64,000 nucleotides of DNA from Narcine bancroftii (Eukaryota): assembly GCF_036971445.1 (NCBI RefSeq), contig NW_027211801.1:620001-684000 (forward strand), written 5' to 3'. Below are positions 5,014 to 44,323 of the stretch, one piece after another. Within the stretch, counting starts at the first letter, position 1, and every line of letters begins with the position of its first letter. The notes below the pieces were generated by a model. That model was not told the DNA's origin, made no database searches, and saw only the letters and a list, made by a program, of their open reading frames with translations. The position numbers and the translations under genes were made by a program.

Positions 5014-5453
5014 GAGTTGTGCTTTGCACAGGATCTGATCACTACAGGTTCACTGTCTATGGGGGAATCTCTCCACATTCTACACACAACAGGAGTTGAA
5101 ATGTGGGGCTGGAAGGACAATTCTACAGAATACAGGAAAATCTGATTTTGGAGATGATTAAGAATTGGGTTGGTCTCCAGCAGTGAACATTTTTGCACGA
5201 TTATACCACACAAGGCAGACACAGACCCCAGAGAGGGCATGAAACATGGGCAGAGAATCAGGAACAAAACATGAAAGTCTGCAGACACCCGTGGTTGAAG
5301 TAAATACACAACACTGGAGTAACTCAGCAAGTCAAACAGTGTCCTTTATATAGCAAAGGTAAAAATACATAATCAACATTTCAGGCTTGAGCCCTTCATT
5401 GAGCTGTGAAATCCAAGGCACGAGCCAAGAATCTGCGTGTTCTGCTGGCCTCA

Positions 5454-5779
5454 CTACACACAGGATAACGACGAGATGGACTCGTGCAGAGGCGAGCTCA
5501 GTGAGCTGTGGCTCACGATGCAGGTATAGCTGGAGCCTGTGTTCCAGGCAGTGGCGGACACATGCAGGTAACTGCTCTGCTTGTAGGTCTGGTCAGCATC
5601 AGGGGATGCGACACCCGTCGTCACCCCGCTCTCTGTCTCGACCCCATCCACGCTCCACCGGAGTGACGCGAAGCCTGGCTTAAAGCCGCTCACCAGGCAA
5701 GACAAGGTGGCCGAGCCTGAGTCGGTCTCATTCTGGGAGGGAGGGAGCAGTTGAACCGAGGGTTTCCGAGAGTCGCTAC
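5454..5779 (-). CDS. IgL: Ig light chain gene A, constant (C1-set) exon
   Basis: Acceptor CCCTTCTGCTCTCCCACACAG|GT in phase 1, matching the J donor. Reads SDSRKPSVQLLPPS...ATLSCLVSGFKPG...W...YKQSSYL...WNTGSSYTCIVSH...SCV*, with a penultimate Cys for the heavy-chain disulfide. Spliced CDS 49+363+326 = 738 nt = 245 aa plus stop. Confidence 0.95.
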
Positions 5780-6834
5780 CTGTGTGGGAGAGCAGAAGGG
5801 AAACGTCAATAGGTGATGAAGTCCCAACATTAACACCAACTCTGAATAAAAGATCCCATGGACATGAACACGATGGCCTTTATAAATCAAAGTATAGAGT
5901 ACAGGAGTTGGGATGTTTTATGGTAAATTAGAGCAAAACATTGGTCATGAACTAGGATTGAAAGAGTGCAGAGAACATTTACTCGGCTGTTAACAGGACC
6001 TCAGGAACAGAGTTACAAAGAAAGGTTAAACAGGCTAGAACTTTATTCCCTGGGGAAAGGAGAATGAGGGAGATTTAGCAGACATATTTAACGTTACGCA
6101 CAGACAGAGAAAATGCTTTTTTCAACTGAGGATAAGTAACATACAAACCAGAGGACATGGGTTCAGGATGAAAGGGGATATTTTGGGGAAGTAGAATGGG
6201 GAAGTAGAATGTAAAAAAATAATCTTCTTCCTTCTGACATCAAAAAAACACAAATATGAAGAAATTAAATTTTATCCCCTTAATTTTTCTAGAATTAAAT
6301 ATAATTGATGAATAAAATTATAATGAACTCTCCGATAAATGACATTTATAATTTTAGTCATACTAAATTCATCCAATCATTTTGATGAATAAATATTCCT
6401 TCATCTTTTACCCATTTCAACCTATATTTATGCAAATCCAACATAGACATTTTATTCTGTAATAAAGAATACATCACAGATCTAAATCCCTTCTTACCTC
6501 CCTCTGTAAGTAAAATTTCAAACTTTGATCAACTAGGTAACCGTAAAGTATGTCCCAAATTATCCAACAATAAAACATTAAATTGATAATAAGAAAAAAG
6601 AGTATTTGAAGGAATATTATTTTTCTCTTTCATTCTTTGGAAAGAAATAAAATAACCTGCTTCATGAGAATCTTGTACAAATTTAATACACTTTTGATCC
6701 CATAACTTCAAAAAATGATTATTGTGTAAAGGAAAAAAGCTTATATTGATACAAAGGAGTTTTATCTGAAATCTTCCCTTGAGTACCTAGAACTTCATTT
6801 ATTTTATACCATAGTTGCAAAATATGTTTCATAT

Positions 6835-7020
6835 TCTTGGGCTTGGCTTCGCGGACGAAGATTTATGGAGGGGGTAAAAAGTCCACGTCAGCTGCAGGCT
6901 CGTTTGTGGCTGACAAGTCCGATGCGGGACAGGCAGACACGGTTGCAGCGGCTGCAGGGGAAAATTGGTTGGTTGGGGTTGGGTGTTCAGTTTTTCCTCC
7001 TTTGCCTTTTGTCAGTGAGG
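6835..7020 (-). mobile_element. Short RTE LINE 3' end
   Basis: Reverse complement of about 1835-2020. Confidence 0.9.
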
Positions 7021-7053
7021 TTAGGGTTAGGGTTAGGGTTAGGGTTAGGGTTA
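7021..7053 (+). repeat. Interstitial telomeric repeat (TTAGGG)5-TTA
   Basis: Five perfect vertebrate telomere hexamers directly at the RTE truncation point. Confidence 0.95.
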
Positions 7054-10000
7054 TTTCATCAAAAAGAAGCTGATCCATCCTCTTCTCACCAATTTGAGAT
7101 CATTCACTATTTGTCCATATCAATGACTTTTCCAAATCAAACATCCTTTTAATAAATTTCAACTGTGCCACATCATAGTAATTTAGAAAATTCAGAAGTT
7201 GTAAACCTCCTCATTCATATTTCCAGGTTAATTTTTGTAAAGATACCTTTGCCATCGCATCTTTCCATAACAATATGCTCACCATGGAGTTCAAATCCTT
7301 AAAAAATTTAGTGGGAATCTTACAAGGAATAGATTGAAATAGATTCTGAAAACGAGGAAAAATGTTCATTTCAATACATTTAACTCTTCTTATTAAAGTA
7401 ATTGGTAAATATTTCCATTGATTCAAGTCATTTTTAATTTAAAAAATAATGGTAAATCATTTATTTCCTATAAATGACTATAATTACTATCTTCCTGAAC
7501 ACCTAAATACTTCATTTGATCCAACCATTTAAATTTAACAGTATGTTTGGAAAGAGAATAATCTATTGCCTCTAATGGACTAATCTCACTTTTTTCCCAA
7601 ATGATTTGACAGCCTGATAGTTCTCCATACTGTTTCAGTCTGTCATGTAACCACTTCAAAGAATTCTGAGGTTTGTTAAGAATATCAAAACATCATCCAC
7701 AAACAAATTAATTTTAAATTCATCAAACTTCACTTTAATATCTACAATATTACCATCTTGCATAATCATCTGAGCCAAAGATTCAATAACTAATGCAAAA
7801 AGAGCTGGTCACAAAGGACATCCTTGTCTAGTTGATCAATTCAACAGAAAAGGTAAAGAGAACTGTGCATTTGTCAAGACTCTAGCAATAGGATTTTTTA
7901 ATATAATGCCTTAATCCAACAAGTAAATCTTGGACCAAATGTAAATTTCTACACAACGTTTAAAAAAAAACTCCACTCAACTCCATCAAAGGCCTTTTCT
8001 GCATCCAATGAAATAACCAATGGTAGTTTGGATTCCTCCCAAGAAATCTTAATCAAAGAAAATAATTCTGCTGAATTTATAAAGAATGTTATTCTGCTGA
8101 ATAACAATTTTTAATAAATCTAGCCTGATCCAAATGAATTAAATCTGGTAAATATTTTGCCAATCTATTAGCTAGAACCTTTGTTATAACCTTATAATCA
8201 GAATTCAACAACGAAATTGGTCGATAAGACCCATCTTTCAATGGATCCCAATCTTTTCTTGAATAAATGGTTATATGGTTATATGGTTAACTATTATAAT
8301 AGCTTGAGAAAATGAATCTGGTAAAGAGTGAACTTCCATTCCTTGTTTCAATACATCTATTAACAATAGCATTAATAAATCTTAAATACTGGATCTTATG
8401 GACCAATTTCTTTGTGAAATGTTGGTTACAAAATTGTAACTAAGGTTCTAGCAAATTGATTGAGGAAACACTTACCAGGTTTAATACATTTAGATCAAGC
8501 TGGTGTTATTAAAAATCATTATTCTTCAGATACTATTGCAATATCAATTAGTATGATTCCTATTTCTTGGGAGGAATCCAACTGACCAGTGGTTTTATCA
8601 TTAGATGCCAAAAAGGCATTTGATCGGAGAGAGTGGAGTTTTTTATTGAAGGTATTAAAAAGGTTTGGGTTTGGACCAATGTTTATTCATTGGATTGAAT
8701 CTTTCTATCAAAAAGCTTTTGCCAGATTGGGGACGAATGGTCAAATATCATCATGTTTTTATTACAACGATTGAGTAGACAAAGTTTCCCTTTGATTCTC
8801 GCATTGTTTGCATTAGGTATTGAAACCTCGGCTCAATTCAAAAGACAAGAAAATAATATTAAAGGTGTTAAAGTGAAATCTGAGGAGTATAAGACTAATT
8901 TATTTCCAGATGATGTTTTGGTTTACTGAACAGAAACTCAGAATTCTTTGAAATCACTATGTGAAAGATTGAAACAACATGGAGAAATATCTGGCTATAA
9001 CATTGATGAGGGAAGAAGTTAGATTCTGCCATTGATTGATGGTGATTATCCTCATTGTAAAATGATTCTTCAATTTAAATGGTCAGATCAAATTAAATAT
9101 TTAGGTATTAGGTTGGATAGGAAATTGGATCATTTTTATGAGTTAAATTAGTTGCCTTTATTTCATAAAATCAAGAGTGATTTCAATAGATGAAAGATTT
9201 ACCTCTCGCATCAATAGATAGAGTTTTTTGTATGAAGATGGATATTTTTCCTAGAATACAATATCTTTTTCAATCTATACATTGTAAATTCCTCAAAAGT
9301 TTCTTAGGAATTTGAATTCTACAGTTAGAAAGTTTATTTTTATGGAAAGATATCATGTTGAGAGAATGTTTACAAAAATTAACGTGAAGGTATGAACTGG
9401 GAGATTTACAACATCCAAATTTTCACAATTATTAAAGAGGACCATGATTGAAATGAATTCATAGAATGTTGGACTTGGATTATCCATTGGTTTGGGCTAA
9501 TACTGTGTTATCCACAATTGCTGAGAAGAAAAATAAGCAATTTATTGATAAATGGAATTCCAAGTTATTATTCACATAAAATTCACCTATTTTGAGACAT
9601 TTAATTGAATGATAGAAAATGATAAATGACGAAATAGGTAAACCGGGGAAAATTTCAGCTAAGACAACTTTATACCCGAATAAACCTTTTCCTTTTACGC
9701 TTAATAATCAAAATGTGAGATCAGAAAGGAATTAAAATTGTACAAGATTGTTATGAAGCTGATTATTTAATGTCTTTTCAAAGAATGAAGGAAATTCCAC
9801 AAAGTACTTTTTTTTGTTATTACCGAGTTAGAGCTTCACTACTGGATAATTTGGGACATTCTTTAATGTTGCCAAGGCAGTTAAAAGTTGAAATTTGGCT
9901 TATGGAAGGTGGGAAGAAAAAAATTTGTGTCTGAAATGTATTTGTTATTACAGAATAAAATGCCTAAATTAGATTTATATAAGTCGAGATTAAATAGGGA

Positions 10001-10573
10001 AAAGGATTTTGGGATCATAGTTGATCAGGAATTTTGCGGTAATTTATGTAAAGATAGTGTGACTAAGATTGTTAATATGAGATAAGTTGCTTCATTATAA
10101 CTTTATACATCAGTGATATTTAACCCCTGAAAAATTAAAGAGATATAATTTAATTTCTTCAGATTTATGTTTCAGGTGTCATAAGGAAGTAGCTTCTTTC
10201 CTACATTCTACTTGGTTATGTGATTATGGTGAAACATTATTGGACACAACTTCAAAAGTTTGTAGGGAAAGTTCTTAAGAATAAATTGGACCCAACATGA
10301 TTTTTGTGAAGTGATGTTAAAATGTTGACCTTGGAATTGAGATTAACTGGGTATCAAATTGCGTTGGGGGCCCACACACACCAATCTGGGGGTCGGGATG
10401 AGGTGACTTTCCCAGGTCAAACCTCATCTGGCTGAGGGGGATCTGCAGAATCTGTCTCCAGCGCGGGGTCTCGACAGTTTACTGACATCTTCTGTGCTCA
10501 CGGACAAAATGAATGAAAAATAGATTCTCAGATCTGGAAATAAAAGTCCGAAAAGTTCCTTGACTTCACTCAC

Positions 10574-10936
10574 TTGTTACGATCAACGTGGATCCAGGGC
10601 CGAACACCCAGGCATTTGCTGAACTGTCCCATGTAGCACAGTAGTAGACGGCGGAGTCTCCAGCTTCCAGGCTGCGGATGGTCAAGGTGTGAGTGTTGGC
10701 CGAGGAGTCTCTGGACGGGGCGAATCGGCTGGTGAACCCGCTGCCTCGGTAGATATCATTATTCGGATATTGTACCAATACCCACTCTGGAGCTTCTCCG
10801 GGTCGCTGTCGGTACCAGCTCATGTAGTAACTTGCAACGCTCCCCCCCTCCAGCCGACACTCCAAGTGGACGGTCTGTCCCGCAGAGAGTGGGTCGGACA
10901 TTGGGGTCTGATGGAGTTTAACCAACGCCAGGACAC
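10574..10936 (-). CDS. IgL: Ig light chain gene A, germline-joined V-J exon (type I / NS5 / sigma-cart-like)
   Basis: Acceptor TTTTTTGTGTCATTGCAG|GT. Open frame GVLA-LVKLHQTPMSDPLSAGQTVHLEC...WYRQRPGEAP...DSAVYYC-ATWDSSANAWV-FGPGSTLIVT, then donor A|GTGAGT. V-set Cys/Trp/YYC and the J motif FGxG are contiguous with no RSS between them. QTPxSDPxSAG, the long CDR2 (IYRGSGFT) and RFxPSRD resemble shark/skate type I light chains as I recall them. Confidence 0.95.
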
Positions 10937-11063
10937 CTGCAATGACACAAAAAACACCGCAGCGGGTGAACGCGGGAAAACAAGGCGCGGGGAAAAGGTC
11001 CAACCCGGCTCAGTTAGCGGGGAGGGGGATAGCATCAACGGGGAATGGCCCCCGACTTCTCAC

Positions 11064-11112
11064 CTGGAACCCAGACCATCAGAGACCACAGGAGACCCAG
11101 CGCAGAGACCAT
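11064..11112 (-). CDS. IgL: Ig light chain gene A, leader exon (MVSALGLLWSLMVWVP-G)
   Basis: ATG at 11112, 16 hydrophobic codons plus 1 nt, then donor CCAG|GTGAGA. A 127-nt intron leads to the V acceptor. This is the classic split Ig leader. Confidence 0.93.
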
Positions 11113-11204
11113 CGCTCCGGACAGGTGAAGACAAAGCAGCGCGATTGGGTTCCTCGAACTCCCGGAGTCGCTCCGGTTCTCCCGTCTGCAAAGCGGCTCC
11201 GGAG

Positions 11205-11370
11205 GCTCTGTTTAAGAAGGGGTGTCCATGAGGGGGAGGGGTCAGGAGGACGCCGTGGGGCGGAGAATCACCCCATCTGGTTGTGGTCCCTGAAATGTTC
11301 TCAGGTCACATACATGACACAACACAGACTTTTTCCCGCGGGAGGGGCAGAATTAGCACTAATGACACAG
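11205..11370 (-). promoter_or_regulatory. Putative IgL V promoter of gene A (TATA-like CTTAAAC about 100 nt upstream of ATG)
   Basis: Position relative to the leader, and homologous sequence (CATAAAC) upstream of leader B. No perfect octamer was seen. Confidence 0.35.
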
Positions 11371-14300
11371 ACACAGACAGTGCCCTCCATCAGAGAACAT
11401 GACAGCACGGAAACAGGCCCTTCGGCCCTTCCAGTCTATGTAAACCATTTTATTTGTATGCTCCCATTGACCTGCACTCAGCCCACAGTCCTCCATACCC
11501 CTCACATCCAAGTATCTATCCAAATTCTTCTTAAATGTGAACATTGACCCCCCCTCCCATCCATGTCCCTTCCCACATTCACCACTTCAAATCATTCCAC
11601 ACTCCCACCAATCTCTATGTGAAGAATTTCCCCAGAACCTTTCCCCTTTCTCCCTTAACCTACGTCTTCTGGTCTCTATCTCACCTACCCTCAGTGGAAA
11701 TATCTTACCTACATTTATTCTGCAAAATCCCCATCATAATTTGAAATAGCTCCATTAAATCTCCCCTCATTCTTCTACAGACAAGGTAATAATTCCTAAC
11801 CTTGACCAAAACATCCCAACTCCTGTACTCAATACTTTGATTTATGAAGGTGAAAGTGCCAAAAGCTCACTTTATGCCCATATCCCTCTGTGATGCCACT
11901 TTGAAGGGATGATGTATCTGTATTCCCAGGACCCTCTGTTTACTGCACTCCTCAGTTGAGAATGTTTGGTATTAAGATGCTTTTTCCATTATTTGCCCCT
12001 GTTTTCCACAGTTTTCAATGTAATCCGATAATTCCCATGCAATTAAAGTGAAGATTCCAGATTTTATTCAAGGTTATTTTTACACATTTTGTTTTGACCA
12101 GGGAGAAATTACAGCCCTTAGTTGCGTCATTTCAGGGAACCATAAAATTTGGGACATTTGGCTTCACAGCTGTGTGTTAGAACTCAGGTGTATTTAATTG
12201 CTTCATTGGTGCAGGTACAAATGAGCGAGGCTTGCTCTAATCATTAGGAGTCTGTGGTTGCCATCTTTCTACACGAGGACCAAAGTTGAGCCAATGAAAG
12301 TTAAAGAAGCCGGTAAACCAGAATAAAACACTGAGAAACATCGTAAAACCTTAGTCTCCTGTGGACAGTCGTCATTGACGTATCCAGACTTGCCTCCTGA
12401 AGAGTGTTTCTGATCTATCCGACAGGAGTTTGTGGACTTTTCTTCATTCTGCTGAGATTTCTTCTGTCATCAAGAGTGGAGGTTTTCCTTGGTCGACCAG
12501 TCCCATTGCTATGACTGAGATCACCAGGACCCTATTTCTTTTTAATCATTCTGGTCATCCTAAGGTTTGGGCGATGTCCCTTACTGTTTTATTCTGGTTT
12601 TTCACCCTCACAGGTACTTCTTTGACTCTCATTGGCACATGTTTGTGACAATAAATCATGATTCTGGCTGATTTCTCTCCACAGGTACTACTTTGGTGCC
12701 AGCAACCCTCTATTTATTCATTTATTTATTTTGCAATTCATCAGGTGGCTTTTAACAATGTGGACATAATTAACAAAAAGATATCAACACTCTCAGTTCC
12801 AGCCATGTAAACTTTTCAGGAGTTCAGGGACTTGAATATTGGCCTTCAGTGTTGGAGGGATTGAATTTTGGAGCAGTCAGGTTGTGTTGTTCTGGTGAGG
12901 CTGCATCTGGAGAATTGCCCCAGTTCTCATCTCTTAACTTGAGTAAGGATTAATTGGTTCTGGAGGCGGTGAAGAGGAGATTCAGCAGGTTGGCCTTTGA
13001 AGTCATCTGGAATTGCACTCACTGGAATTTAGGTGAATGACAGTGGATCTAATAGAAATGTCTAAAATTATGAAAGGCATAGATAAGATAGAGGTAGGTA
13101 AGTTGTTTCCATTGGTGGGGAAAGATCAGAACATGGGCACTTAACGCAAGATTCAGGGGAGTAGAGTTGGGACATTGATTTGGAGGAACTCCCTTTCCCC
13201 GAGATTGGGGAATCTGTGGAATTCACTGCCCATTGAAGCATTCGAGGTGACTTCAGTAAATATATTGAAGGCAAAGTTGTGTACAATTTTACATAATAGG
13301 GGAATTAAGGGATTTGAGGAAAAGGCAGGTTGGTGGAGATGAGCCCATCATCAGTTCAGTCAAAAGGTTTGATGTATCTGGGACTTGTTCCCTCCTCCCT
13401 CACCCTCAGGCCTAGTCAGGCAATGGTTTCCAGGTTTGAAAAGACAGCTGCCTTTTGTGGTTCTCATTAGCTCCCTCTGGGACGCTGGCGGTGTTGTCCG
13501 AGCCTTTATTTAGCTGCCATTACACAAATCTACACTGTTTTTAATCATGCAGGCAGGTGTTGTGGTCACTTGGCTCTAGCAGTTGTTGAGAGGGCGGGGA
13601 GGAGACAGAAAGGGAGAGAGTGCTGATGTGGGGCAGCACGTTTATAATTCTGGAATCATTAATGCTCCACCATTTACTGCAAGGCTCTGGGTGAAGGTAT
13701 TAAAGATAAACATAACAGTTCTGAGGCCATTCAAGTACTGAACTTCAGTCCGGGAGCAAAGGCCGAGAGGGAGGCAGAAACAGCGGAAACTCGGTGTTAG
13801 GGACAGGACAGGGGCAGTGATTGCGTGGTTGTAATGGGCCGAAAAGCCATTAAAGTGGTAGCAGATTATTGCTTCTCAGACTGGAGGCTTGTGACTAGTT
13901 GTGTGTCTCAGGGATCAAGGCTGGACCCATTGCTGTTGGTTTTTCTTTGACTATTTGATTAAAAATTTTAAAACCACAACATTAAGTCAATAATGAATTT
14001 TACATATATATGCATATATATATAAGACAATACATGTGGTATATATACTAATCCCTACTCCCTCCCCAACACCCACCTCCCTTCCAATACTCTTCAGAAA
14101 GAAAGATGTCAGAGATTATGAATGAATATATGTTCAAATTAACCCCTGTGAAACCGAGTCCCACCAAGAGGACGAGCTGTTGAGAGCTGAAATTTTCAAA
14201 AACACTTGTTGTAAATATGGGCTCCATATTTATGGGCTCCTTAATATTTATCACTTAAATTCTAAGTTAACCTTTGAAGAGGAAAGCAAGATCTCATTTC

Positions 14301-15799
14301 AGTATGTTATCTCTGCATCCACAAATCTGTATCAGACTTCCAAGTAATAGCAAGTTGTAAAAATTCAATTTGATAAATGTTTTACCTTAATGTTAAACTA
14401 AACATTTTAATATATCCTAATAGAAATAACTTTTGGTCTAATGGAAGTTTAACCTTTAACACTTTCTCTCAACATGCTTTAATACATGGCCAAGTCGAGT
14501 GAACAAATGAACCTATGATGTCTCAAACATAATTCATAAGAAATTCAATTAAATATTTTTAATTTTTCAGGTGTTAAATATAATTGATCTAAAAAGTTAT
14601 ATTGTTCTAATCTGCATCTTGCATTGATGATTTTAGTCATATTATCTATACATAACATTCTCCAATCATCTTGATCTATTATCCTACCTAAATCAGTTTC
14701 CCACTTTAATCTTGATCTACAAATATCTGATTTAGACATTTTCCTTTGAAGTAATTTAGACATTTCTGAAATAAATTTCTTAATACTCTCTTTAGTAAGT
14801 AAAATTTCTACCTCAGACTGGCAAGGTAATCTTAAACTTTGACCTAATTTATCAATTAATAAAGTTTTAATGTGATAATAACAAAAAGGTATTATTTTTA
14901 GTTGAAAAGAAATATAATAACCAACTTCAAATCAACTTTCTATCATTTGAATCCCTATTTGATTCCTATCTTTATAAATTGATTATTAACAGTCAAAATA
15001 AAAAAAATTATTTTGATATAAAGTTGTTTTACATGAAATCTAACCTTTCCCACCTATTTCATAATCTATTTTATTCCATAATTCAATTAAAAATTTCAGT
15101 ATTAGTGGGTCCTTACTTCAATTAAAATTCCATTAATAAATCTGAACTGAGCAGCGTTATAATAATTTGGAAAAGTGGAAGCTGTAAAATGTCGCACTGC
15201 TAAAGGCAGAGCTGCTGAATTAAATGCTGTCCACACCAAGCACGTAAACCAGTATCTGCCATTTATTCAAACCACGCGCGTTCCTTTTTAGTGGGGGCGA
15301 GAGGGGCAACAGGCTCATGGGGGTGATGTCATAATGCAGATGTAAGGCCTGGTCATTCCCCTGGCAACGTGCTCCTGCAGCCTGGAACTTCAGTGCGGTG
15401 GGAATCAAGTCTCTGTGCTCTCCCGTGTTGGTTGTTTGCTGCAGTGATTTGGCCAGTCATGTGTGTGTTTGACCTGGCTCACTACAGGACCCTGTGATTG
15501 AAATTTCCAAATTAATTTCTCTAAGGAAATTCTTACCATTTTACCTTTCTAATTAAACAGATCCTTAAAATGTTTTGATGTATATTGTAAGGAATGGATT
15601 GAGAAAGATATTGAATGCTTGGGAAAATATTCATCTTGATATAATTCACTCTTCCTATTAAAGTGATAGGTAAATAATTCCATCTATTCAAATCATCTTT
15701 AATTTTATTAAATAATGGTAAATAATTCAACTAATATAAAATATCCAAATTTTATACATTTTAATTCCCAAATATTTAATTCCTTTCCCATATCACCAT

Positions 15800-17585
15800 A
15801 TGCACCAATTACAGTATGGAAACAGGTGATATCAGCCCCTCTCATCCACACCGATTTAAGTGATCTCTTCTTGTCCCACCCACCCACTCCCTGTCCAGAA
15901 CCCTCCAATCCCCTCACATCCAAGCACTCATTCAACCTTCTCTTAAATGACAACATTGGTCCTGCTGCAACCACTCAGCCCCCACTCTCTGAGTGAAGAA
16001 GCTTCCTCTCATGTTACTCCTAAACTTTTGCCCCCAACCCATAAATTATGACTCCTCGTTCCAATCTCACCGACCCTCAAGGGGAAGAGCCTATTCACAT
16101 CTACTCTGTCTGTCCCCATCATAATTTTAAATACCTCTATCAAATCCTCCCTCAACTTTCTATGCTCCGATGAATAAAGAGCCAGTCAACTCAATCATTC
16201 TTTGTATTCTAGATACTGCAATCCAGGCAACATTTTAGTAAATCTTCTCTGAACTCTCTCTATCTTATTGATATCCTTCCTATAATTTGGGGCCCACAAC
16301 TGCACACACTATTCCAAATTTGGCCTCACCAATGCCTTGAACAGTCTGTCTTGGGTAAACTTATACCTCTCATTTTGTTCGTTTTAGATTGGTCACAGTG
16401 TTTGAGCTACCGAAAGAATATAGACACACACACCGAGAGCAGTTCAGTTTATACAAATGTTTATTACAAATTCAAAAGCTGATTTCACACTACAATATGC
16501 AAGCCCTTCCCAACTATACTTATCAACGCTTGGACTGGTCCCAACTGCCGAAGTGAGGCAACGACTGCACACTTGTCGTTGGTTGTCAGGACGCCAGTAG
16601 CAACTTCTCCACCTCCCCTGACCGGGACGTTGGCTGGACTCCAGAATTTCTTCTTCTTGCTGAGAGATGTTGCCACCTCTCGGAGAGTCTCAAACTTCAG
16701 CAGCGGGACCATGACTTATATTACCCAAAAACTGCTTACCCAAGCACCTATTCCCAGCACAGCAAGAAAGATAAGCAAGCAAGCTAGCATGCTAGGCTTC
16801 TAACGAATAACATAACTTTCAGCTTATCACTTTGAATACAATGGTTTATTTTGCATCAAGGCAAGGCCTCTGACTGTCTGTGACCAAAACAAGCAGGAAG
16901 ATTAAATGTTCTTGGTACACAGATGTCCTTTCGTCGGATAACAGCATCTCTGGCCCTTTGGTGGAATTTAGCTTATGTCTGCTGAATCTAAAACACAAGC
17001 AGGTTCTCAGCCTTCCAGACCCCAGAGCTGCAAGTTTAAAAAAAACAGGTTAGAATCTTCCATTACACAGTCTTAATACCATCTCCCAGATCCTATATTC
17101 TCTGCTTTGATTTATAAAGGCCAGCATGCCAAAAACCATCTTTACCACCCTATTTACATGAGAATCCATTTTCAAAGAACAATGAAGCATTATTCCAAGA
17201 TCTCTTTGTTCCTCTGCATTCCTCAATGCCCTCCCCTTCACTGCATATTTCCTGTTTTGATTATTCTTCCCATAATGAAGTACTTCACACTTATCCATAG
17301 TAAACTCCATCTGCCATCTTTCAGCCCACTCTTCTAAACAGTCCAAATCCTTCTGCAGTTCCCAAAAACCCTATTTTTGTATCATCTTCATCTTTATTAA
17401 CCCCAATTTTCCACTCTATCATCTAAATCATTAAAATAAATGACGAACAGCAAGGGACCCAACAGCGAGCCCTGAGGCACACCACTCATCGCCAGCCTCC
17501 ATCCTGACAGACAGTTATCCACCAATACTCTTTGGTGTCTATCTTCAAGCCACTGTTGAACCCATCTGACTATCTCAACATTAAT
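15800..17585 (-). mobile_element. CR1 LINE fragment interrupted by the solo LTR
   Basis: SGVPQGSLLGPLLFVIYFNDLD and WAERWQMEF..DKCEVLHYG motifs. Confidence 0.8.
16347..17067 (-). mobile_element. Solo LTR inserted in a CR1 fragment
   Basis: TG...CA termini flanked by a 5-bp target-site duplication CAGTC (16342-16346 and 17068-17072). Minus-strand AATAAA near 16460. Confidence 0.8.
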
Positions 17586-17703
17586 ACCATTTAAATTGAA
17601 CCTTTTTTTGCATTGAGTATAATGCCCCTCAACCAAAAGCATAATTTCACTTTTATCTCAATTAATTTTATAACCTGTTATTTCACCATATTCCTTTAAT
17701 CTC

Positions 17704-20300
17704 TGTTGTGAACTGTGATTCACTATTAATGTGCTGTACTGACGACTGGTCCCACCTCCCTGCTCCTCCCCCTGTTACCTGTATCTAACCCTAGTTTCAC
17801 ACCTAAACCCAGAACCCAACTGAAGCCTATTCATGACCCCTACATGTGTTGTAATGTAATAAAAGTGTATGTTTTCCCTCCAGTCGAGTGTGAGCTTTTA
17901 TCTCCACGACAATTTTATTAGCTGACAAACAAGGATGGAGATGTTACTCAAGCCAAGTTTGCTGCTAATAGACCCCCAGTCTCCTGAATGTGGCTGTGGA
18001 GTTTTCATATTGGCTAGACTGCTTCCAGGCCTACCTGAACTCGGCCAGGGACATCTTCCATACAGACAAACTCTGGAGTTCAGTGGTCATGACAAGGGTA
18101 GGGACGAACGGGTACGTAGTCGTCCGAGATTTCCCGATGTACGAGCCCACCATCGAGGAGCTGAATGCCCACTACATAAAAGCCCGGAACGTGGACCTAG
18201 TGAGGCACTGGCTTGCCCTAAGACGCCAATGGCCCGGAGAGTCGATTGAGGACAACGTGCTGGTTATGCGGACACTGGCTAAGAAGAGCAGGTATGTGGC
18301 CACCTCAGGCCACATCTGGAAAGCTAAACAGATCCAGAACACTCTGGCCGTGGGGGTCCACGCCAGGCATGTGAGGCAGCAACTGCTTGAGTCAAGAAGG
18401 AAAAACATCATTAGCCATGTCACGCTGGCCAAATCTCTGGAACAGGTCAGTCTCGAGAACAATGTCCTCGTGGCCTACGAGATGGCTCTCTCGGGTGAGC
18501 ACCTCCAAGGACCGGATCCTCCCTCTAAAGGCAGCTGCCTCCTGAACCCAGGAGTGCTTTTTCTGCAACAAGGGACAGCATCCCGTTGCCTGCTGCCCAG
18601 CCAAAGACTTGCGTGCTCCAGCTGTGAGAAGAAGGGACATTGGGTGAGGGAGTGCCACACTAAGGGAGGTCCGGCTTCCAGTACCAAGACATCTGCCCTG
18701 GGCTCACCCAAGATTGCCTGCTGTGCATCCCGCTGCCTACAGAAATAGCGCAAAAATCAAGAATGACATCGAGAATGACAACATTTCTTTGTGGATGATT
18801 AAAATCTCCACAGAGAATTTTGGGCATCACCTACTGGCCAGGAAGCCCTTAACCACACACCAGATGCCTTGTCCAGGGAATGCTGTGCATCCGCATACAC
18901 CGGTCAACTGTGGACCTTACAGAATACGCTCTGCCACCCAGGGGTCACCCGCATGGCTCATTTGATCAAGTCCCGTAACTTTCCCTATGCAATGGAAAAC
19001 GTCAGGTCATGCCAGGTCTGCGCTGAGTATAAGTCACACTTTTATCACCCAGCAAAAGCACACCTGATCAAGTCATTCAGGCCCTTTGAACGGCTCAGTA
19101 TCAACTTTACAAGACCTTGCCTCTCCACGAACTGGAATATATGATTTCATTCATCGATGATTACTCCCACATCCCGGTCGCCATCCCGTGCTCAGGCACA
19201 CATGCTATGTCTGTTATGAAGGCCCTAGATTCTATTTTCAACCTGTTCAAGTGTCCCACCTATATTGATAGTGACAGGGGCTCAGCCTTCATCAGCGAGG
19301 AGCTGCCTCAGTTCCTGTTGGTGGGTGCATCATGTCCAAAAGGACAACTAGTTTCAACCCCCAGGGGAACGGGCAGGTTGAAAAAGAGAATGCCCCGATC
19401 TGGAAGGCTGTCAAACTTGCCCTGAAGCAAGAAGGCCTTCCAGACTCATGCTGGCAGGATGTCCTCCCCATCGCGCACCACTCCATTTGGTCGCTACTCT
19501 GCACTGCAAACAAACCTACTGCTCATGAGCTCACGTTTACATTCAACAGAAGGTCGACATCAGGGACTAAGCTCCCAGCTCGGCTCAGTAGTCCTGCTCC
19601 GGTCCTTTTCAAGAAGCACGTGAGGAGAAGCAAGACGTGAGGAGAAGTAAGGTGGAAAGGGTGAAATTGCTCCATGCCAACCCCACGTACGCATACATGC
19701 CGTACCTGGATGGTAGGGAAGACACCATCTCCATCAGGGACCAGACACCTGCTGGAACAGAGGATCCATTGCCTCAGAGGCCCCACAATCTACTGAGCTT
19801 TTTCTCCCCACCCCTGCTCGGGGCCTCACGGGACCTGGTTTTGTAGGAGAGTGAATCCACCTCCATTGTCGAGCTGGAGCCCTAGCCCACTCACCTTCCA
19901 TCACAGGCGGACCACGAGACTCAAAGACCCCATTACACCTCGGTGCTAAGGCACTTCAACAGGATCTCCAGAGCCCTAGACCTCCTCAATCTGGAAATAC
20001 TATCATAAATATTTCTCTTCTGTGTCTCTTCCTGGCTATTGATGCTTGTTCTCGTCATCCACAGACCCTTAATTCTGAAGGAAGGGGTGAATGTAGTGAA
20101 AAGGGATTCACTAGACGTGTGCTGTAGTGATGACTGGTCCTGCCTCCCAGCTCCTCCCCCTGGAGCCTGTATATAAACCCTGGTTTCCTGCCTAAACCCA
20201 GAACCTCACTGAAGCTTATTCGTGAACCCCACCTGTGTTGTCAGCTAATAAAACCATTTGTTTTCCCTCCAGTCGAGTGTGAACTTTAATCAACGCCACA
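17704..20300 (+). mobile_element. Internally deleted Gypsy/Ty3 LTR retrotransposon
   Basis: LTRs 17704-17911 and 20092-20300 (TG...CA, AATAAA), PPT GAAGGAAGGGGTGAA, gag with zinc knuckle CSSCEKKGHWVREC, integrase (IDSDRGSAF, PQGNGQVEK). No matching target-site duplication. Confidence 0.88.
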
Positions 20301-20481
20301 TGTGTTGAGGTGACTTTTCAAGGGTCAAACCTCATCTGGCTTAGGGGGATCTGAAGAATCTGTCTCCAGTGCTGTTTCTTGACAGTTTACTGACATCTTC
20401 TGTGCTCACGGACAAAATGAATTTTTTTAAAAATTCGCAAATCGAGAAATAAATGTCCCAAAATTTACTTGAGTTCACTAC

Positions 20482-20519
20482 TGGTAACGACCAATATCGT
20501 TCCAGGGTCGAACACTTAT
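20482..20519 (-). pseudogene. IgL: IgL cluster B unrearranged pseudo-J segment (*VFDPGTILVVT)
   Basis: Aligns to WVFGPGSTLIVT of gene A. It has TAA at the Trp codon, FGPG changed to FDPG, and a weakened donor (A|GTAGTG versus A|GTGAGT). The downstream intron sequence 20305-20480 matches 10400-10573. Confidence 0.88.
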
Positions 20520-20558
20520 CACTGTGCGATGTTCCAATAGAGAGGACCTCCTAAAATC
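20520..20558 (-). promoter_or_regulatory. J-type recombination signal sequence with 23-bp spacer (cluster B)
   Basis: Plus strand CACTGTG-23 nt-CCTAAAATC (nonamer 6/9 against ACAAAAACC), abutting the J segment. It is 12/23-compatible with the V-RSS and in deletional orientation. Confidence 0.82.
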
Positions 20559-21292
20559 TTCAATGCTCCAACAGGCCGTCTTCAGCACCAATCCCTGCAC
20601 TGTTCAGGCGAATCCACATTACAGAAGGAGACCTGAAAGCAAAAATCGAACCGGTCATATCACAAGTTAGGGGAAACATTCAGGTGTGTGCGGGAGAAAG
20701 AGTTAACTCTCAGACATTGGGAAGGCCAAATTTGGAGAATTACATGCATTTGGTCACCAAACTGCAGGAAAGACAACAATAACATTGGAAGGAGGTGGGC
20801 GGAGGATTTACACGGATGTTGCCATGTCTTGAGGAACTCAGTTACAGGGAAAGTTTAAATAGGTGAGGAGTGAAAAAGGAAAGTCTGCAGATGCAATGAT
20901 TGAAGTTGGAACAACGGTGGGGAAACTCAGCAGGTCAAGCATCAAATTTTATGTAGCAGAAATAGCCTGAGCCCTTCAACAAGGGTTGAGGGGGCGCACG
21001 GACAAAATGGTGAGGGGGCGGGGGTGGTGCAGGAATCTAAATAGGCAGGAGGTCAGAGGTGGATAAGGGAGGGAGGGCACATCAGCCAACAAGGGGAGGG
21101 GGGATGGGTCTGTAAATGGGGAGGGAAAGGAGGTGGAGAGCTGGAGGGAAGGGGAGAGGGAGATGGGGAAGAGAGGGAGAATGGGGAGTCGCTAGTAGTG
21201 GGTGGTCAATCGGCCAGGCAGGCAGGAGAAAGAATCCTGGTGATGGATGTGCGGGCACTGACAAGAAATCTAAATCTCAGGCCACCCCAGAG

Positions 21293-21320
21293 GGTTTTTG
21301 TAAAGTGCGTTCTCAATGTG
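21293..21320 (-). promoter_or_regulatory. V-type recombination signal sequence with 12-bp spacer (cluster B)
   Basis: Minus strand CACATTG-AGAACGCACTTT-ACAAAAACC: heptamer 6/7, spacer exactly 12, nonamer 9/9. It is preceded by CCAGCAAAGGT, which resembles the V 3' end of gene A (TCAGCAAATGC). Confidence 0.92.
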
Positions 21321-21377
21321 ACCTTTGCTGGAGGGGTCAGGTTATAATAAATGGGGAATGGCCCCCTGACTTCTCAC

Positions 21378-21426
21378 CTGGAATCCAGACCATCATAGAC
21401 CACAGGAGATGCGGCGCAGAGATCAT
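21378..21426 (-). pseudogene. IgL: IgL cluster B leader exon (MISAPHLLWSMMVWIP-G), intact but with no V exon downstream
   Basis: Paralog of leader A with ATG at 21426 and donor CCAG|GTGAGA. Only 57 nt separate the donor from the V-RSS heptamer. Confidence 0.88.
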
Positions 21427-22419
21427 TGGTCCAGACAGGCGAAGACAAAGCTGCGCGATTGGGTTCCTCAAACTCCCGGAGCCAATCCGGTTCTAGCGTG
21501 TGCAAAGCGGCTCCGGAGGCTCTGTTTATGAAGGGATGCCCATGAGGGAGAGGTGTCAGGAGAACGCCGTGGGGTGGAGAATCACCTAATCTGGTTGTGA
21601 TCCCTGAAATAATCAGATTTGTTCTCAGGTCACATACATGATATAACACAAACTTTCTCCTGCAGGAGAGAGGGATAATTACCACTAATTAGCCAGAGAC
21701 AGACAGTGCCCTCCATCAAAGAACATTACAGACAAAACAGGCCCTTCAGCCCATTTAGTCTGTGTCGAACAATGTTACTGCCTAGTCCCACTGACATGCA
21801 CCCCACCCATAGCCATCCATACCCCTCCCATCTAGGTACCTGTCCAAATACTTCTAAAATGTGAACATTGAGCCTGCATTCACCACTTAAGCTGACACCT
21901 CATTCCACACTCCCACTGCTCTCTGTGTGAAGTTCACCCAAATCTTTTCCCCTTTCTCCCTTAACCCATGTCCTCTGGTCTATATCTCACTTCCCCTCAC
22001 GGGAAAATCCTGCCTATATTTACTCTGTCTATCTCCCTCATAATTTTAAATACCTCTATCAAATCTCCATTCATTCTTCTACATTCCATGGAATAAAGTC
22101 CTAACCTGTTTAACCTTTACTTGTACGTCAGTTCCTGAAGTTGGGGCAACTTCCTAGTAAATCTTCTCTGCTCTCTTTCAATCTTTGTGATAACTTTCCT
22201 GTAGTTTGGTGATCAAAACTGCACACAATGCTCCAGATTTGGTCTCACCAATATCTCATAGAACTTGACCAAAACGTCCCAACTCCTGTTCTTAATACTT
22301 CAATTTATGAAGGTCAAGATTCCAAAAGCTCTCTTTACGCCCCTATACCCCCGTGATGCCATGTTCAGACAATGATGTATCTATATTCTCAGGTCCCTCT
22401 GTTCTCCCCCACTCTTCAG

Positions 22420-23150
22420 TTTAGGATGTTTGGAACTAAGATGGTTTTTTCCTTTAATTACATGTGAATTGTCTGATTTCAAGTTGAAAACTGAGGAGAA
22501 CAGCAACAAATAAAGTCCACATTCCACTTTATATTCAAGGTTATTTGTACACAGTTTGGTTTGACCATGGAGAAATTACAGCCCTTTTTATCCATAGTCC
22601 CGTCATTTCAGCGAACCATAACGTTTGGGACATTTGGCTTCACCGCTGTTTGTGAGAACTCAGGTGTGTTTAATTGCTTCATTGGTGCAGGTATAAGTGA
22701 GCGAGACTTGCTCTAAGCGTTTGGAGTCTGTGGTTGCCATCTTTCTACACGAGGACCAGAGTTGAGCAAATGAAAGTGAAAGAATCCATTATGAGGCTGG
22801 AAAACCAGAATAAAACAGTGAGAGACATCGTCAAACCTTAGTCTCCGGAGGACAGTCGCCATGACGTATCCACACCTGTTTCCTGAAGAGTGTTTCTGAT
22901 CGGTCCGACAGGAATTTGGGGAATCTTCTTCATTCTGCTGAGATTTCTTCTGTCATAAACAGTGGAGATTTTCCTTGGTCGACCAGTCCCATTGCATCGA
23001 CTGCGATCACCTGGGTCCTCTTTCTTCTCAATGATGTTCCAAACAGTTGATTTTGGTCATTCTGAGATTTGGGCGACGTCCCTTACTGTTTTATTCTGGT
23101 TTTCCACCCTCACAGGTACTTCTTTGACTCGGATTGGCATGTTTGTGCCA
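22420..23150. mobile_element. Tc1/mariner-like DNA transposon remnant with internal inversion (paralog about 11960-12650)
   Basis: N-terminal transposase-like segment (MKVKESIMRLENQNKTVRDI) appears once on each strand. Confidence 0.55.
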
Positions 23151-24619
23151 ATAAATCCTGATTCTGATGGATTTATCTCCACAGATGCTACTTGGCTGGC
23201 TGAGTCCTTCCAGTAACCCTTCACTTTTATTTATTTTGCTTTTCATAAGATGGCTTTTAACAACGTGGACATAATTAAAGAAAGGAAATCAGCACTGGCG
23301 TTTCAGCCATGGATACATTGCAGGAGTTCAGGGACTAGAATCTTGGCCTTCAGTTCTGGATGGATTGAATTTAGTGGCAGGCAGATTGTGCTATAACTGT
23401 AAAAAGTCCTGCTCAGGCTGCATCTGGAGAACTGCAGCAGTTCTGGTCTCCTTACCTGAGGAAGGATGTACTGGCTTTAAAGAGGTGCAGAGGACATTCA
23501 CCAAGTTGATTCCAGAGATGAAGGGGTTGGCCTATGAAGAGAGAATGAGTCGTCTGTGTAAGCACTTGCTGGAATTTAGAAGAATGGGATGGGATCTTAC
23601 AGAAATATATAAAATCATGAAATGTATAGATAAGATAGAGGTTGGTGAGTTGTTCCCATTGGTGAGGGAGACCAGAACGAGGGGACTTTGCCTCAAGATT
23701 CAGGGGAGTAGCTTTAGGATGGAGATGAGGAGGAACTGCTATTCCCAGATGGTGGGGAATCTGTGGAATTCGCTGCCTATTGAAGCATTCCAGGCAACCT
23801 CAGTAAATATATTGAAGGCAAGGTTGTTTTGATTTTTACATAGTAGGTGAATTAAGGGATATGGTAAAAGGCAGGTCAGTGTAAATGAACCCATCATCAG
23901 GTTAGAGAAAAGGCATGATGTATCTGGAAATTGTTTCTCCTCCCTCACCCTCAGGCCTAGACAGACAATGGCTCCCATGGTCGAGAAGACAGCTGCATTC
24001 TGTGGTTCTCATTAAATCCCTCTGGGGACCTCAGCGGTGTTGCCCAAGCCTTTACTTAGCTGCCATTACACAAATCAACAATGTTTCTAATTCTGCAGGC
24101 AGGTTTTGTGGTCACTGGGCCCCAGCAGTTGGTGAGGGGGGAGGGGAGGAGGCAGGAAGGGAGGGAGAGCTGATGTGGGCTGTGTGTTTATACTTTTGCA
24201 AATATTAATGCTCCACCATTTACTGCGAGGCTCTGGATGAAAGTATTAAAGATAAACATTGCAGTCTGGAGATAAACACATCAGAATAAAGTACTGAGAT
24301 TCAGTCTGGGAGCAAAGGCCGAGAGGGCGGCAGAAACAACGGGTAGTCGGTGTAAGAGACAGGGCAGTGGGCACTGAGGGTTGTAATGGGACAAAAGGCC
24401 ATTAAAGTGGTAGCAGATTATTGCTTCTCAATGCGGAGGCTAGTGGTATGTCTCAGGGATCAGGGCTGGGGCCAGTGCTGCTTGGTTTTATTAATTTTTT
24501 ATTTAAAAGTTTAAAATCACAACTTTCAATCAATAATGAATTATATATATATGATAATACATGTGGTGTATATACCAATCCCTCACTCCTTCCTCCCTTT
24601 GAGCCCCCACCCCTTGACC

Positions 24620-41494: not shown

Positions 41495-41872
41495 TTCGCA
41501 GGTGATTCCGGTAGAGGACCCATGATTCGGAGCCGAACAGGAGTGTGGGTATGACAACAGCTCTGTATACGCTAATCTTTGTGAGGTTTTTCAGTTGGTT
41601 GTTTTTCCAGACTCTTTTGTGTAGTCTTCCAAAGGTGCTATTTGCCTTGGTTAGTCTATTGTCTATCTCATTGTCGATCCTTGAATCCGATGAAATGGTG
41701 CAGCCAAGATAGGTAAACTGGTTGACTGTTTTGAGTTTTGTGTGCCCGATGGAGATGTGGGGGGGCTGGTAGTCATGGTGGGGAGCTGGCTGATGGAGGA
41801 CCTTAGTTTTCTTCAGGCTGACTTCCAGGCCAAACATTTTGTCAGTTTCCGCAAAACAGGACGTCAAGCGCT
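41495..41872 (-). mobile_element. RTE LINE internal fragment
   Basis: QRLTSCFAET...ESWVLYR, nearly identical to the other RTE copies. Confidence 0.85.
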
Positions 41873-41884
41873 GTGTGATATGCA

Positions 41885-44107: not shown

Positions 44108-44323
44108 NNNNNNNNNNNNNNNNNNNNNNNNNNNNNNNNNNNNNNNNNNNNNNNNNNNNNNNNNNNNNNNNNNNNNNNNNNNNNNNNNNNNNNNNNNNNN
44201 NNNNNNNNNNNNNNNNNNNNNNNNNNNNNNNNNNNNNNNNNNNNNNNNNNNNNNNNNNNNNNNNNNNNNNNNNNNNNNNNNNNNNNNNNNNNNNNNNNNN
44301 NNNNNNNNNNNNNNNNNNNNNNN
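44108..44323. other. Assembly gap (N run)
   Basis: 216 N. Confidence 1.

What the first reader, a model, noticed from the sequence alone, without database searches (positions are those of the whole stretch)
10574..21426. Germline-joined IgL V-J gene beside its unrearranged, RSS-bearing paralog: a before-and-after record of V-J joining in the germline
Seen: gene A has V and J fused in frame but keeps its leader intron and 4.8-kb J-C intron, so it is not a processed retrocopy. Ten kb upstream, a collinear duplicate sharing the flanking TE junctions keeps a 12-RSS after the V position and a 23-RSS before J, 801 bp apart including the RSSs. Established: cartilaginous fish have cluster-type Ig loci, some germline-joined, generally attributed to RAG activity in germ cells, and skate type I light chains were described as joined. 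Inference: the duplication ancestor was split, and A was joined afterwards while B decayed. If this is a batoid, a split type I cluster is itself notable.
Basis: partly seen in the sequence, partly recalled or inferred. Interest (0 to 1): 0.85.

Follow-up and report, generated by a model that had tools for sequence, protein, structure and literature searches.

The report
Joined ray lambda gene beside split relic
An electric-ray antibody light-chain gene whose V and J pieces are already fused in the genome lies 10 kb from a broken sister copy that still carries the two recombination signals, the first trace I could find that this light-chain type (lambda), so far reported only as fused in sharks and rays, was once split.

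Summary
Gene A (minus strand) has a leader exon (11064-11112), a 127-nt leader intron, one in-frame VJ exon (10574-10936), a 4794-nt J-C intron and a C exon (5454-5779). Its VJ exon is identical to the matching part of RefSeq XP_069768339.1 of Narcine bancroftii. RNA contigs from two samples show both splices.

Copy B lies 10.3 kb upstream. It keeps a leader, about 18 nt of V 3' end, a 12-RSS with perfect nonamer, 734 nt of intervening DNA, a weaker 23-RSS and a J. The RSSs span 801 nt. B has no V body and no C exon. A and B flanks are collinear over about 3.1 kb (K2P about 0.20) and share TE junctions.

Lee et al. 2000 already showed joined and split paralogue pairs, and germline RAG joining, for nurse-shark kappa, so the process is known. 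Reviews state that every cartilaginous-fish lambda gene studied is joined, so a lambda relic with RSSs looks new. Its 12/23 polarity is the reverse of bony-vertebrate lambda (23/12).

Limits: B is one decayed pseudogene. No DNA contig shown bridges A's junction. Other clusters of the genome could not be fetched. The scan noted other joined IgL clusters elsewhere in this genome.

The parts
11064..11112 (-). Gene A leader exon (ATG 11112-11110, 49 nt, phase 1)
   Evidence: Sequence. It is identical to the leader of P0014 and P0037. The splice joint 10936/11064 is present in RNA contigs of X1 and X8.
10937..11063 (-). Gene A leader intron, 127 nt, GT..AG
   Evidence: joint 'skips 127'. The intron is also present in DNA contigs: X3 record 16 and X7 records 23-24.
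10574..10936 (-). Gene A fused VJ exon (363 nt), V-set domain, in frame, no RSS
   Evidence: Open frame. Pfam V-set, E 6e-17. 100% identical to the matching part of XP_069768339.1 / P0037. Very high depth in the RNA runs.
10605..10614 (-). Gene A V-J junction: the 10 nt between conserved V 3' and J motifs. By comparison with B, the V|J boundary falls between 10612 and 10611.
   Evidence: Ten nt separate the same motifs in A, in the paralogue transcript (loose ends at 10607 and 10615) and in B (3 nt of V plus 7 nt of J).
5780..10573 (-). Gene A J-C intron, 4794 nt, largely transposable-element sequence
   Evidence: Joint 5779/10574 (CT..AC on the plus strand, GT..AG on the minus strand) in 9 contigs of X1 and 3 contigs of X8. 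TE content from self-comparison.
5454..5779 (-). Gene A C exon (C1-set domain, stop codon 5454-5456)
   Evidence: Pfam C1-set, E 1.8e-21. 98% identical to P0014.
11113..14020 (-). Gene A 5' UTR and upstream flank, duplicated in B
   Evidence: Collinear with 21427-24559, K2P 0.20-0.215. TE-fragment junctions are shared with B.
21427..24559 (-). Copy B upstream flank, paralogous to A's
21378..21426 (-). Copy B leader exon (open, 88% nt identity to A's) with GT donor
21339..21377 (-). Copy B remnant of the 5' part of the leader intron. Homology to A ends here. The rest of the intron and the V body (about 0.4 kb) are missing.
   Evidence: Alignment. blastn gives 25 nt at 96%. tblastn finds no V anywhere in B.
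21321..21338 (-). Copy B stub of the V 3' end (about 18 nt, 12 of 17 positions matching A's CDR3-coding end)
   Evidence: Read. The similarity is short and statistically weak by itself.
21293..21320 (-). Copy B V-side 12-RSS: heptamer CACATTG, 12-nt spacer, consensus nonamer ACAAAAACC
   Evidence: 0 mismatches to the pattern; it is the only exact nonamer in the window, and 0 of 400 shuffles gave the full pattern.
20559..21292 (-). Copy B V-J intervening sequence, 734 nt. The stretch 20712-20869 is a TE fragment.
20520..20558 (-). Copy B J-side 23-RSS: T-rich nonamer (6 of 9), 23-nt spacer, heptamer CACAGTG on the gene strand, abutting J
   Evidence: The motif alone is not significant. Its position at the J boundary and its pairing with the 12-RSS give it weight.
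20482..20519 (-). Copy B J segment (38 nt, same length as A's J part, 71% identity, in-frame TAA near its 5' end), followed by a GT donor
   Evidence: The first 7 nt match the paralogue's junction at 6 of 7 positions (loose ends).
20306..20481 (-). Copy B remnant of the start of the J-C intron. Homology to A ends at an LTR element.
   Evidence: K2P 0.16.

Best explanation
The window comes from the lambda (type II) light-chain region of the electric ray Narcine bancroftii.

Gene A is a working cluster gene (leader, VJ, C). Its V and J are fused in the assembled genome. It is spliced and abundantly transcribed.

Copy B is a dead paralogue of the same cluster type. It preserves the unrearranged state: leader, V 3' end, 12-RSS, about 0.73 kb of intervening DNA, 23-RSS, J. 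It has lost its V body and is no longer next to a C exon.

A and B descend from one segmental duplication of a split cluster. In the lineage leading to A, the two RSSs were cut and the V and J coding ends were joined in a germ-line cell by ordinary deletional V(D)J-type (RAG) recombination, with no net gain or loss of nucleotides. The joined gene was kept and probably amplified, because at least four joined paralogues share the same junction length.

Shown: the anatomy of A and B, A's expression and splicing, the paralogy of the flanks, and the RSS geometry.

Inferred: that RAG did the joining, that it happened in germ cells, and the order of events (from the irreversibility of joining).
For: - Anatomy of A and B.
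- A's VJ exon is identical to the matching part of XP_069768339.1 of N. bancroftii. Three further 245-aa paralogues lie on the same 1.9-Mb contig, all with the same CDR3 length.
- Both splices are seen in RNA contigs of two samples, with exon depth 1e5-1e6 against about 30-50 in the introns.
- DNA contigs of another sample of the same organism label (X3) and of a second organism label (X7) carry the J-C intron next to J, and V next to the leader intron.
- Lambda assignment: Heterodontus 'lambda light chain' at 63-64% over V and 62-68% over C; V-set and C1-set domains.
- 12-RSS: exact pattern, unique in the window, 0 of 400 shuffles. The 23-RSS heptamer abuts J. The 12/23 rule and deletional orientation are both met.
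- A and B flanks are collinear, with uniform K2P of 0.20-0.215 over 2.8 kb and shared TE junctions.
- Junction arithmetic: 10 nt lie between the same conserved motifs in A, in a paralogue's transcript and in B (3 + 7). B's J start matches the paralogue's junction at 6 of 7 nt.
- Precedent for the mechanism and for the parsimony argument: PMC2193156.
Against: - No contig displayed by read laying bridges 10608-10626 in a DNA run. Contigs break there, probably where the paralogues branch. Germline status of the joint therefore rests on the assembly, the RefSeq models, the fixed abundant transcript and the family precedent.
- B is a single decayed copy. Its V stub is only about 18 nt, and its 23-RSS nonamer is 6 of 9.
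- The DNA of the other lambda clusters of this genome could not be fetched, so no flank tree was built. Gene conversion or mosaicism cannot be excluded.
- The age of the duplication is poorly constrained. K2P of 0.2 could mean tens to a few hundred million years at elasmobranch rates (my own estimate).
Confidence: 0.8

Rival explanations
1. B received its RSS-flanked cassette secondarily. An excised signal-ended fragment was re-inserted by RAG (transposition) into a lambda gene that was already joined, so the direction of events is joined to split.
For: Re-insertion of excised DNA was raised as a possibility by Lee et al. (PMC2193156, section 21) and discussed in PMC2193153. The RSSs in B sit exactly at the V and J coding ends.
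Against: RAG transposition leaves a 5-bp target-site duplication (PMC2193153). In B the last 5 nt before the V heptamer and the first 5 nt after the J heptamer differ. The V-end and J-start nucleotides also add up to exactly the joined length, 10 nt, with nothing duplicated.
Confidence: 0.04
2. B is a mosaic. Its leader, upstream flank and J come from a lambda cluster, but the V end, the RSSs and the intervening DNA were imported by unequal recombination or gene conversion from a split cluster of another isotype (kappa, sigma or sigma-2). This would also explain the kappa-type 12/23 polarity.
For: 12/23 is the polarity of the kappa loci listed in PMC5985310, whereas sterlet lambda is 23/12. 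Nothing in the window is homologous to the intervening DNA apart from a TE fragment.
Against: Lambda-family sequence runs right up to both heptamers. The V stub resembles A's CDR3-coding end, and B's J start matches a lambda paralogue's junction at 6 of 7 nt. Breakpoints would have to fall at the heptamer borders. Divergence from A is similar on both sides of the V-J region.
Confidence: 0.07
3. The RSS-like motifs in B are chance matches in a pseudogene that lost its V-J region through unrelated deletions and insertions. B says nothing about a split ancestor.
For: The 23-RSS motif is not enriched on its own. The V stub is short. Part of the intervening DNA is TE-derived.
Against: The 12-RSS pattern is exact and unique in 128 kb of both strands, with 0 of 400 shuffles. 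It lies within 60 nt of the end of leader-intron homology. A CAC..GTG heptamer sits exactly where J coding begins, with a 23-nt spacer to an A/T-rich nonamer. Orientation and the 12/23 pairing are both correct.
Confidence: 0.04
4. A's fused VJ is a somatic B-cell rearrangement or an assembly artefact, and the germline locus is split.
For: No displayed DNA contig bridges the junction.
Against: - Four paralogous genes on the same contig are all modelled as fused, with one junction length.
- Two distinct fixed junctions (A's and P0014's) are seen in RNA contigs, with exon depth of 1e5-1e6 over A. A rearranging locus would give many junctions.
- No RSS-like loose ends were listed at 10611/10612 in the DNA runs.
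- All lambda genes studied in cartilaginous fishes are germline-joined (PMC4279169, PMC5192425).
Confidence: 0.03

Closest known systems
Nurse-shark NS4 (kappa, type III) joined and split light-chain gene pairs (Lee, Fitch, Flajnik, Hsu 2000, PMC2193156)
   Same: Both have cluster-type IgL genes in which a germline-joined VJ gene has a split, RSS-bearing paralogue. Both use the parsimony argument that joining is irreversible. In both, the junctions are explicable by blunt or near-blunt joining without N additions, and the joined genes are transcribed.
   Different: There the isotype is kappa, the split partners are functional, and pairs are up to 99% identical (0-49 Myr). Here the isotype is lambda, the split partner is a pseudogene without V or C, flank divergence is about 20%, and only one pair was seen.
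Germline-joined type II (lambda) light-chain clusters of sandbar shark, horned shark, skate, ratfish and nurse shark (NS3)
   Same: Gene A has the same isotype, the same leader-VJ-C cluster layout and a fused VJ. It belongs to a small family whose differences concentrate in the CDRs.
   Different: [quoted passage not shown] The relic B with RSSs has no reported counterpart that I could find.
Skate (Raja erinacea) type I light-chain clusters (Anderson et al. 1995, PMC2192082)
   Same: Batoid light-chain genes that are all joined in the germline, are expressed, and vary among copies mostly in the CDRs.
   Different: These are a different isotype (type I, sigma-2).
Lambda loci of bony vertebrates (for example sterlet IgL3, PMC5985310)
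   Same: Same isotype by sequence similarity. The J carries an FGXG motif and the CDR3 is lambda-like.
   Different: Their RSS layout is V-23 / J-12. Relic B shows V-12 / J-23, the kappa-type layout.

Membership tests
Immunoglobulin light chain, lambda / type II isotype of cartilaginous fishes | V-set variable domain with conserved Cys-Trp-Cys and a J with an FGXG motif, followed by one C1-set constant domain ending in the interchain Cys | tested here: met
   Pfam V-set E 6e-17 and C1-set E 1.8e-21. Translation.
Immunoglobulin light chain, lambda / type II isotype of cartilaginous fishes | Closest named relatives are lambda / type II chains rather than kappa, sigma or sigma-2 | tested here: met
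   Heterodontus 'lambda light chain of immunoglobulin' at 63-64% over V and 62-68% over C. No kappa- or sigma-named protein appeared among the hits. No formal tree with all four isotypes was built, because reference sequences of the other isotypes were not available by reference.
Immunoglobulin light chain, lambda / type II isotype of cartilaginous fishes | Lambda-type RSS layout (V-23 / J-12), as in bony vertebrates | tested here: not met
   Relic B shows V-12 / J-23. As far as I know, this marker was never defined for cartilaginous-fish lambda, because no split gene was known. I treat it as a difference and not as an exclusion.
Germline-joined Ig gene | V and J contiguous in one exon of genomic DNA with no RSS, and with the leader intron and J-C intron kept (so not a cDNA copy) | tested here: met
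Germline-joined Ig gene | The joint is present in non-lymphoid DNA and in several individuals | tested here: inconclusive
   DNA contigs of X3 and X7 cover both sides, but none shown bridges 10608-10626. The tissue of origin of the runs is not given. The four fused RefSeq paralogues and the two fixed transcript junctions are indirect support.
Germline-joined Ig gene | The gene is transcribed and correctly spliced | tested here: met
   Leader-VJ and VJ-C joints are present in RNA contigs of X1 and X8.
Recombination signal sequences (RAG substrates) | Heptamer starting with CAC at the coding border, spacer of 12 or 23 (plus or minus 1), A-rich nonamer, one 12-RSS paired with one 23-RSS, in deletional orientation | tested here: met
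   12-RSS: heptamer 6 of 7, nonamer 9 of 9. 23-RSS: heptamer 6 of 7, nonamer 6 of 9. CAC is intact at both coding borders. Activity was not tested.
RAG-mediated transposition product | 5-bp target-site duplication flanking the RSS-ended insert | tested here: not met
   The flanking pentamers differ, and the coding ends sum to the joined length with nothing duplicated. Criterion taken from PMC2193153.

The most novel reading that the evidence does not exclude
B is the first recorded remnant of an unrearranged lambda (type II) cluster in a cartilaginous fish.

It would show directly that the uniformly fused state of this isotype is secondary, produced by germline V(D)J-type joining of split genes. 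It would also show that chondrichthyan lambda used the kappa-type V-12 / J-23 signal layout. In that case the V-23 / J-12 layout of bony-vertebrate lambda, or B's own layout, arose by a later RSS swap such as a germline hybrid-joint inversion.
Probability: 0.5. Interest if true: 0.62.

Novelty: new member of a known kind. Interest (0 to 1): 0.52.

Why it matters
For kappa, sigma-2 and heavy chains, split and joined genes coexist, and the origin of joined genes by germline recombination has been argued from such pairs. For lambda, every gene described in sharks, skates and chimaeras is fused. The same argument could therefore not be made for lambda, and the RSS layout of this isotype in cartilaginous fishes was, to my knowledge, unknown.

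A relic that keeps both signals gives a direct, if single and decayed, data point on both questions. It also points to a place to look: the 1.9-Mb lambda-bearing scaffold of Narcine and its counterparts in other rays.

The finding does not change the accepted picture of germline RAG activity. It extends that picture to the one isotype that lacked evidence.

Tried and rejected
I could not fetch the DNA of the three paralogous Narcine lambda genes or of the Hemitrygon and Heterodontus relatives. No flank or segment tree was built.
- The PDB sequence searches with the V and C exons did not discriminate isotypes, because multi-domain antibody chains dominate the lists.
- Read laying (its only call) on 5420-11200 gave the splices, but no displayed contig bridging the V-J joint in the DNA runs.
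- A retrocopy origin of A is rejected, because both introns are present.
- RAG transposition into a joined gene is rejected, because there is no 5-bp duplication.
- I looked for a V or J belonging to the second C exon at 55.7 kb. None is present in the window. The idea that this C exon is B's lost C, separated by an inversion, fits its similar divergence from A (K2P 0.18 against 0.20). It has no identifiable breakpoint, because the homology ends coincide with TE borders.
- Papers by Criscitiello and Flajnik 2007 and Hsu 2016 are not held. The main text of the elephant-shark genome paper says nothing on IgL. The statement that no split lambda is known rests on two reviews (2014, 2016), Lee et al. 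2000 and blank searches.
- The spliced leader-VJ-C model was not joined or searched as one sequence. Exons and ORFs were searched separately by reference.
- The N stretches (44108-44323, 48173-48354) were left untouched.

Full report
**What is there**

The window holds one complete light-chain cluster gene on the minus strand, gene A.
- The leader exon is 11064-11112.
- It is followed by a 127-nt GT..AG intron.
- A single 363-nt exon (10574-10936) reads without interruption from FR1 through the YYC motif, a lambda-like CDR3 and the J motif FGPG, and ends at a GT donor.
- The C exon lies 4794 nt downstream, at 5454-5779, behind a normal acceptor.
- Pfam calls the two exons V-set and C1-set.
- Only one V, two J-like segments and two C exons exist in the 64 kb.

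**Identity**

Searched exon by exon and by ORF reference, the VJ exon is identical to the matching part of RefSeq protein XP_069768339.1 of the lesser electric ray Narcine bancroftii. The tblastn hit of the close paralogue P0014 on A's C exon is 98% identical.

That protein shares a 90% cluster with three other 245-residue proteins encoded on the same 1.9-Mb contig.
- All four have the same CDR3 length.
- They differ at 18 positions, 13 of them in CDR1, CDR2 or the junction.

The nearest proteins named by a submitter are Heterodontus 'lambda light chain of immunoglobulin', at 63-64% over V and 62-68% over C. The isotype is therefore lambda, the old 'type II', and the animal is a batoid.

**Expression and independent data**

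Eleven public runs hold the stretch 10400-11200 or part of it. I laid four of them on 5420-11200.
- X1 and X8 behave as RNA. Exon depth is 1e5-1e6, against about 30-50 in introns.
- Their contigs carry both splice joints, 10936/11064 and 5779/10574.
- Loose ends at 10607 and 10615 spell the junction of paralogue P0014, so a second fixed junction is also transcribed.
- DNA runs X3 (same organism label, differing at scattered intron sites, so another individual or haplotype) and X7 (a second organism label) have contigs that join the J-C intron to J, and V to the leader intron and leader.
- No displayed DNA contig bridges 10608-10626. The contigs stop where the paralogues diverge.

Germline status of the joint is therefore very likely but not directly demonstrated here.

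**The sister copy**

A second leader exon lies 10.3 kb upstream on the same strand, at 21378-21426. It is 88% identical to A's and has a GT donor. Reading downstream along the minus strand from that leader:
- Homology to A's leader intron stops after about 38 nt.
- About 18 nt resembling A's CDR3-coding V end follow (21321-21338).
- Next comes CACATTG, 12 nt, ACAAAAACC (21293-21320).
- 734 nt of other DNA follow, 158 nt of it a TE fragment.
- Next comes a T-rich nonamer (6 of 9), a 23-nt spacer and a heptamer ending in GTG (20520-20558).
- The heptamer directly abuts a 38-nt J (20482-20519), which has a donor and 176 nt of J-C intron homologous to A's.

The 12-RSS nonamer is the only exact consensus nonamer on either strand of the window. 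The full 12-RSS pattern never arose in 400 composition-matched shuffles. The 23-RSS would not be significant as a bare motif. Its weight comes from sitting exactly at the J boundary, in the right orientation, and obeying the 12/23 rule with its partner.

B has no V body (tblastn) and no C exon downstream. An LTR element and other repeats follow instead. B's J carries an in-frame TAA. B is a pseudogene.

**Are A and B duplicates?**

Yes.
- A 11034-14020 aligns collinearly with B 21347-24559, and A 10399-10607 with B 20306-20515.
- K2P is uniform at 0.20-0.215 in three upstream blocks and 0.16 in the intron start.
- Two fragments of a repeat family, whose free copy lies at 62.9-64.0 kb, sit at corresponding positions in both flanks (A 11955 and B 22414; A 13794-13915 and B 24344-24474). 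Those insertions predate the duplication.

The divergence is large. The duplication is old, tens to perhaps a few hundred million years at slow elasmobranch rates. That figure is my own rough estimate and is not calibrated here.

**The junction**

Ten nucleotides separate the same conserved V and J motifs in three places:
- in A;
- in the P0014 transcript;
- in B, counted as 3 nt before the V heptamer plus 7 nt after the J heptamer.

B's first seven J nucleotides match the P0014 junction at 6 of 7. This fixes B's heptamer/J border as the true germline border. It shows that the joined genes have the length of an untrimmed join with no additions, like some nurse-shark kappa joints that lack N regions (PMC2193156).

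The arithmetic also excludes RAG transposition into a joined gene, which would leave a 5-bp duplication (criterion in PMC2193153).

Because all four functional paralogues share the junction length, one joining event followed by amplification is the simplest history. This needs their DNA to test.

**Mechanism**

The best-supported history has four steps.
1. A split lambda cluster duplicated.
2. In the lineage of A, the 12- and 23-RSS were cleaved and the coding ends were joined in a germ-line cell by the ordinary deletional V(D)J reaction.
3. The fused gene stayed functional and expanded.
4. The other copy lost its V body and its C exon and decayed, while still carrying both signals.

The anatomy, paralogy, expression and RSS geometry are shown. 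RAG involvement, the germ-cell setting and the order of events are inferred. The order follows from the irreversibility of joining, the same logic as in PMC2193156.

**What is known, and what is new**

The process itself is established.
- Lee et al. 2000 found joined and split NS4 (kappa) genes in the nurse shark, dated the joinings to 0-49 Myr, and argued for RAG-like activity in germ cells.
- For lambda, two reviews state that all genes are germline-joined in every species studied (PMC4279169, PMC5192425). Lee et al. list nurse-shark NS3 among the isotypes in which all identified genes are joined.
- Six literature searches found no report of a split lambda cluster in a cartilaginous fish (one search concerned the Narcine genome).

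Gene A is therefore an ordinary member of a known class, already annotated in RefSeq. Relic B appears to be new.

B's V-12 / J-23 layout is that of the kappa loci listed for sterlet, and the reverse of sterlet lambda (23/12; PMC5985310). Swapping of 12- and 23-RSS by a germline hybrid-joint inversion has been proposed from shark heavy-chain clusters (PMC2193153). Such a swap could account for the difference in either lineage.

**Limits**

- B is a single, decayed copy.
- No DNA contig was shown across A's joint.
- Key subscription papers were not readable.
- The N stretches were left as they are.

**Verdict**

Interest is moderate: a new example of a known process, with one unreported detail (an RSS-bearing lambda relic with kappa-type polarity) that specialists would want verified in other rays.

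Noticed in passing
window 55738-56063 (+): A second lambda C exon lies here, with an intact acceptor and open frame. It is 78% identical in protein to A's C and has an extra Cys near its end. Its orientation is opposite to A and B, and no V or J lies upstream of it in the window. Its divergence from A (K2P 0.18) is like B's and unlike the near-identical C regions of the four RefSeq paralogues. It may be the C exon that B lost, separated by an inversion. No clean breakpoint was found.
   Followed up: partly
window 10607-10615 (loose ends in run X1): RNA contigs diverge from A exactly in the CDR3 and spell the junction of paralogue XP_069768335.1 (P0014). So at least two germline-fixed lambda junctions are transcribed in the same sample.
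   Followed up: partly
P0014, P0035, P0036, P0037: The four Narcine lambda paralogues have identical frameworks and differ at 18 positions. Thirteen of these are in CDR1, CDR2 or the two junction codons. This is the pattern described for skate joined genes, with diversity carried by germline copies.
   Followed up: partly
window 17704-20291: An LTR-flanked retroelement remnant lies here. It has direct repeats at 17704-17902 and 20092-20291 (81% identical) and gag-like and integrase-like ORFs between them. It sits where B's J-C intron homology to A ends.
   Followed up: no
window 906-2027, 33263-34380, 51828-52780, 41497-41873, 6824-7025: A young repeat family of about 1.1 kb, with copies 94-98% identical, is scattered through the locus. 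One copy lies inside A's J-C intron next to telomere-like hexamer repeats.
   Followed up: no
window 20712-20869 and 22099-22256: Part of B's V-J intervening DNA is an inverted copy (73% identical) of a repeat fragment that lies in B's own upstream flank. This is the same 157-nt piece that A's flank lacks.
   Followed up: no
window 5775-5780 / 10572-10577 (tables 5 and 5c): Several minor J-C joint variants with 1-4 extra or replaced letters appear in the RNA contigs. They are probably transcripts of paralogous clusters whose J ends differ, laid on A.
   Followed up: no
window 44108-44323 and 48173-48354: Two N stretches lie within the region that another first-reader note calls a GSK3A-like pseudogene.
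   Followed up: no
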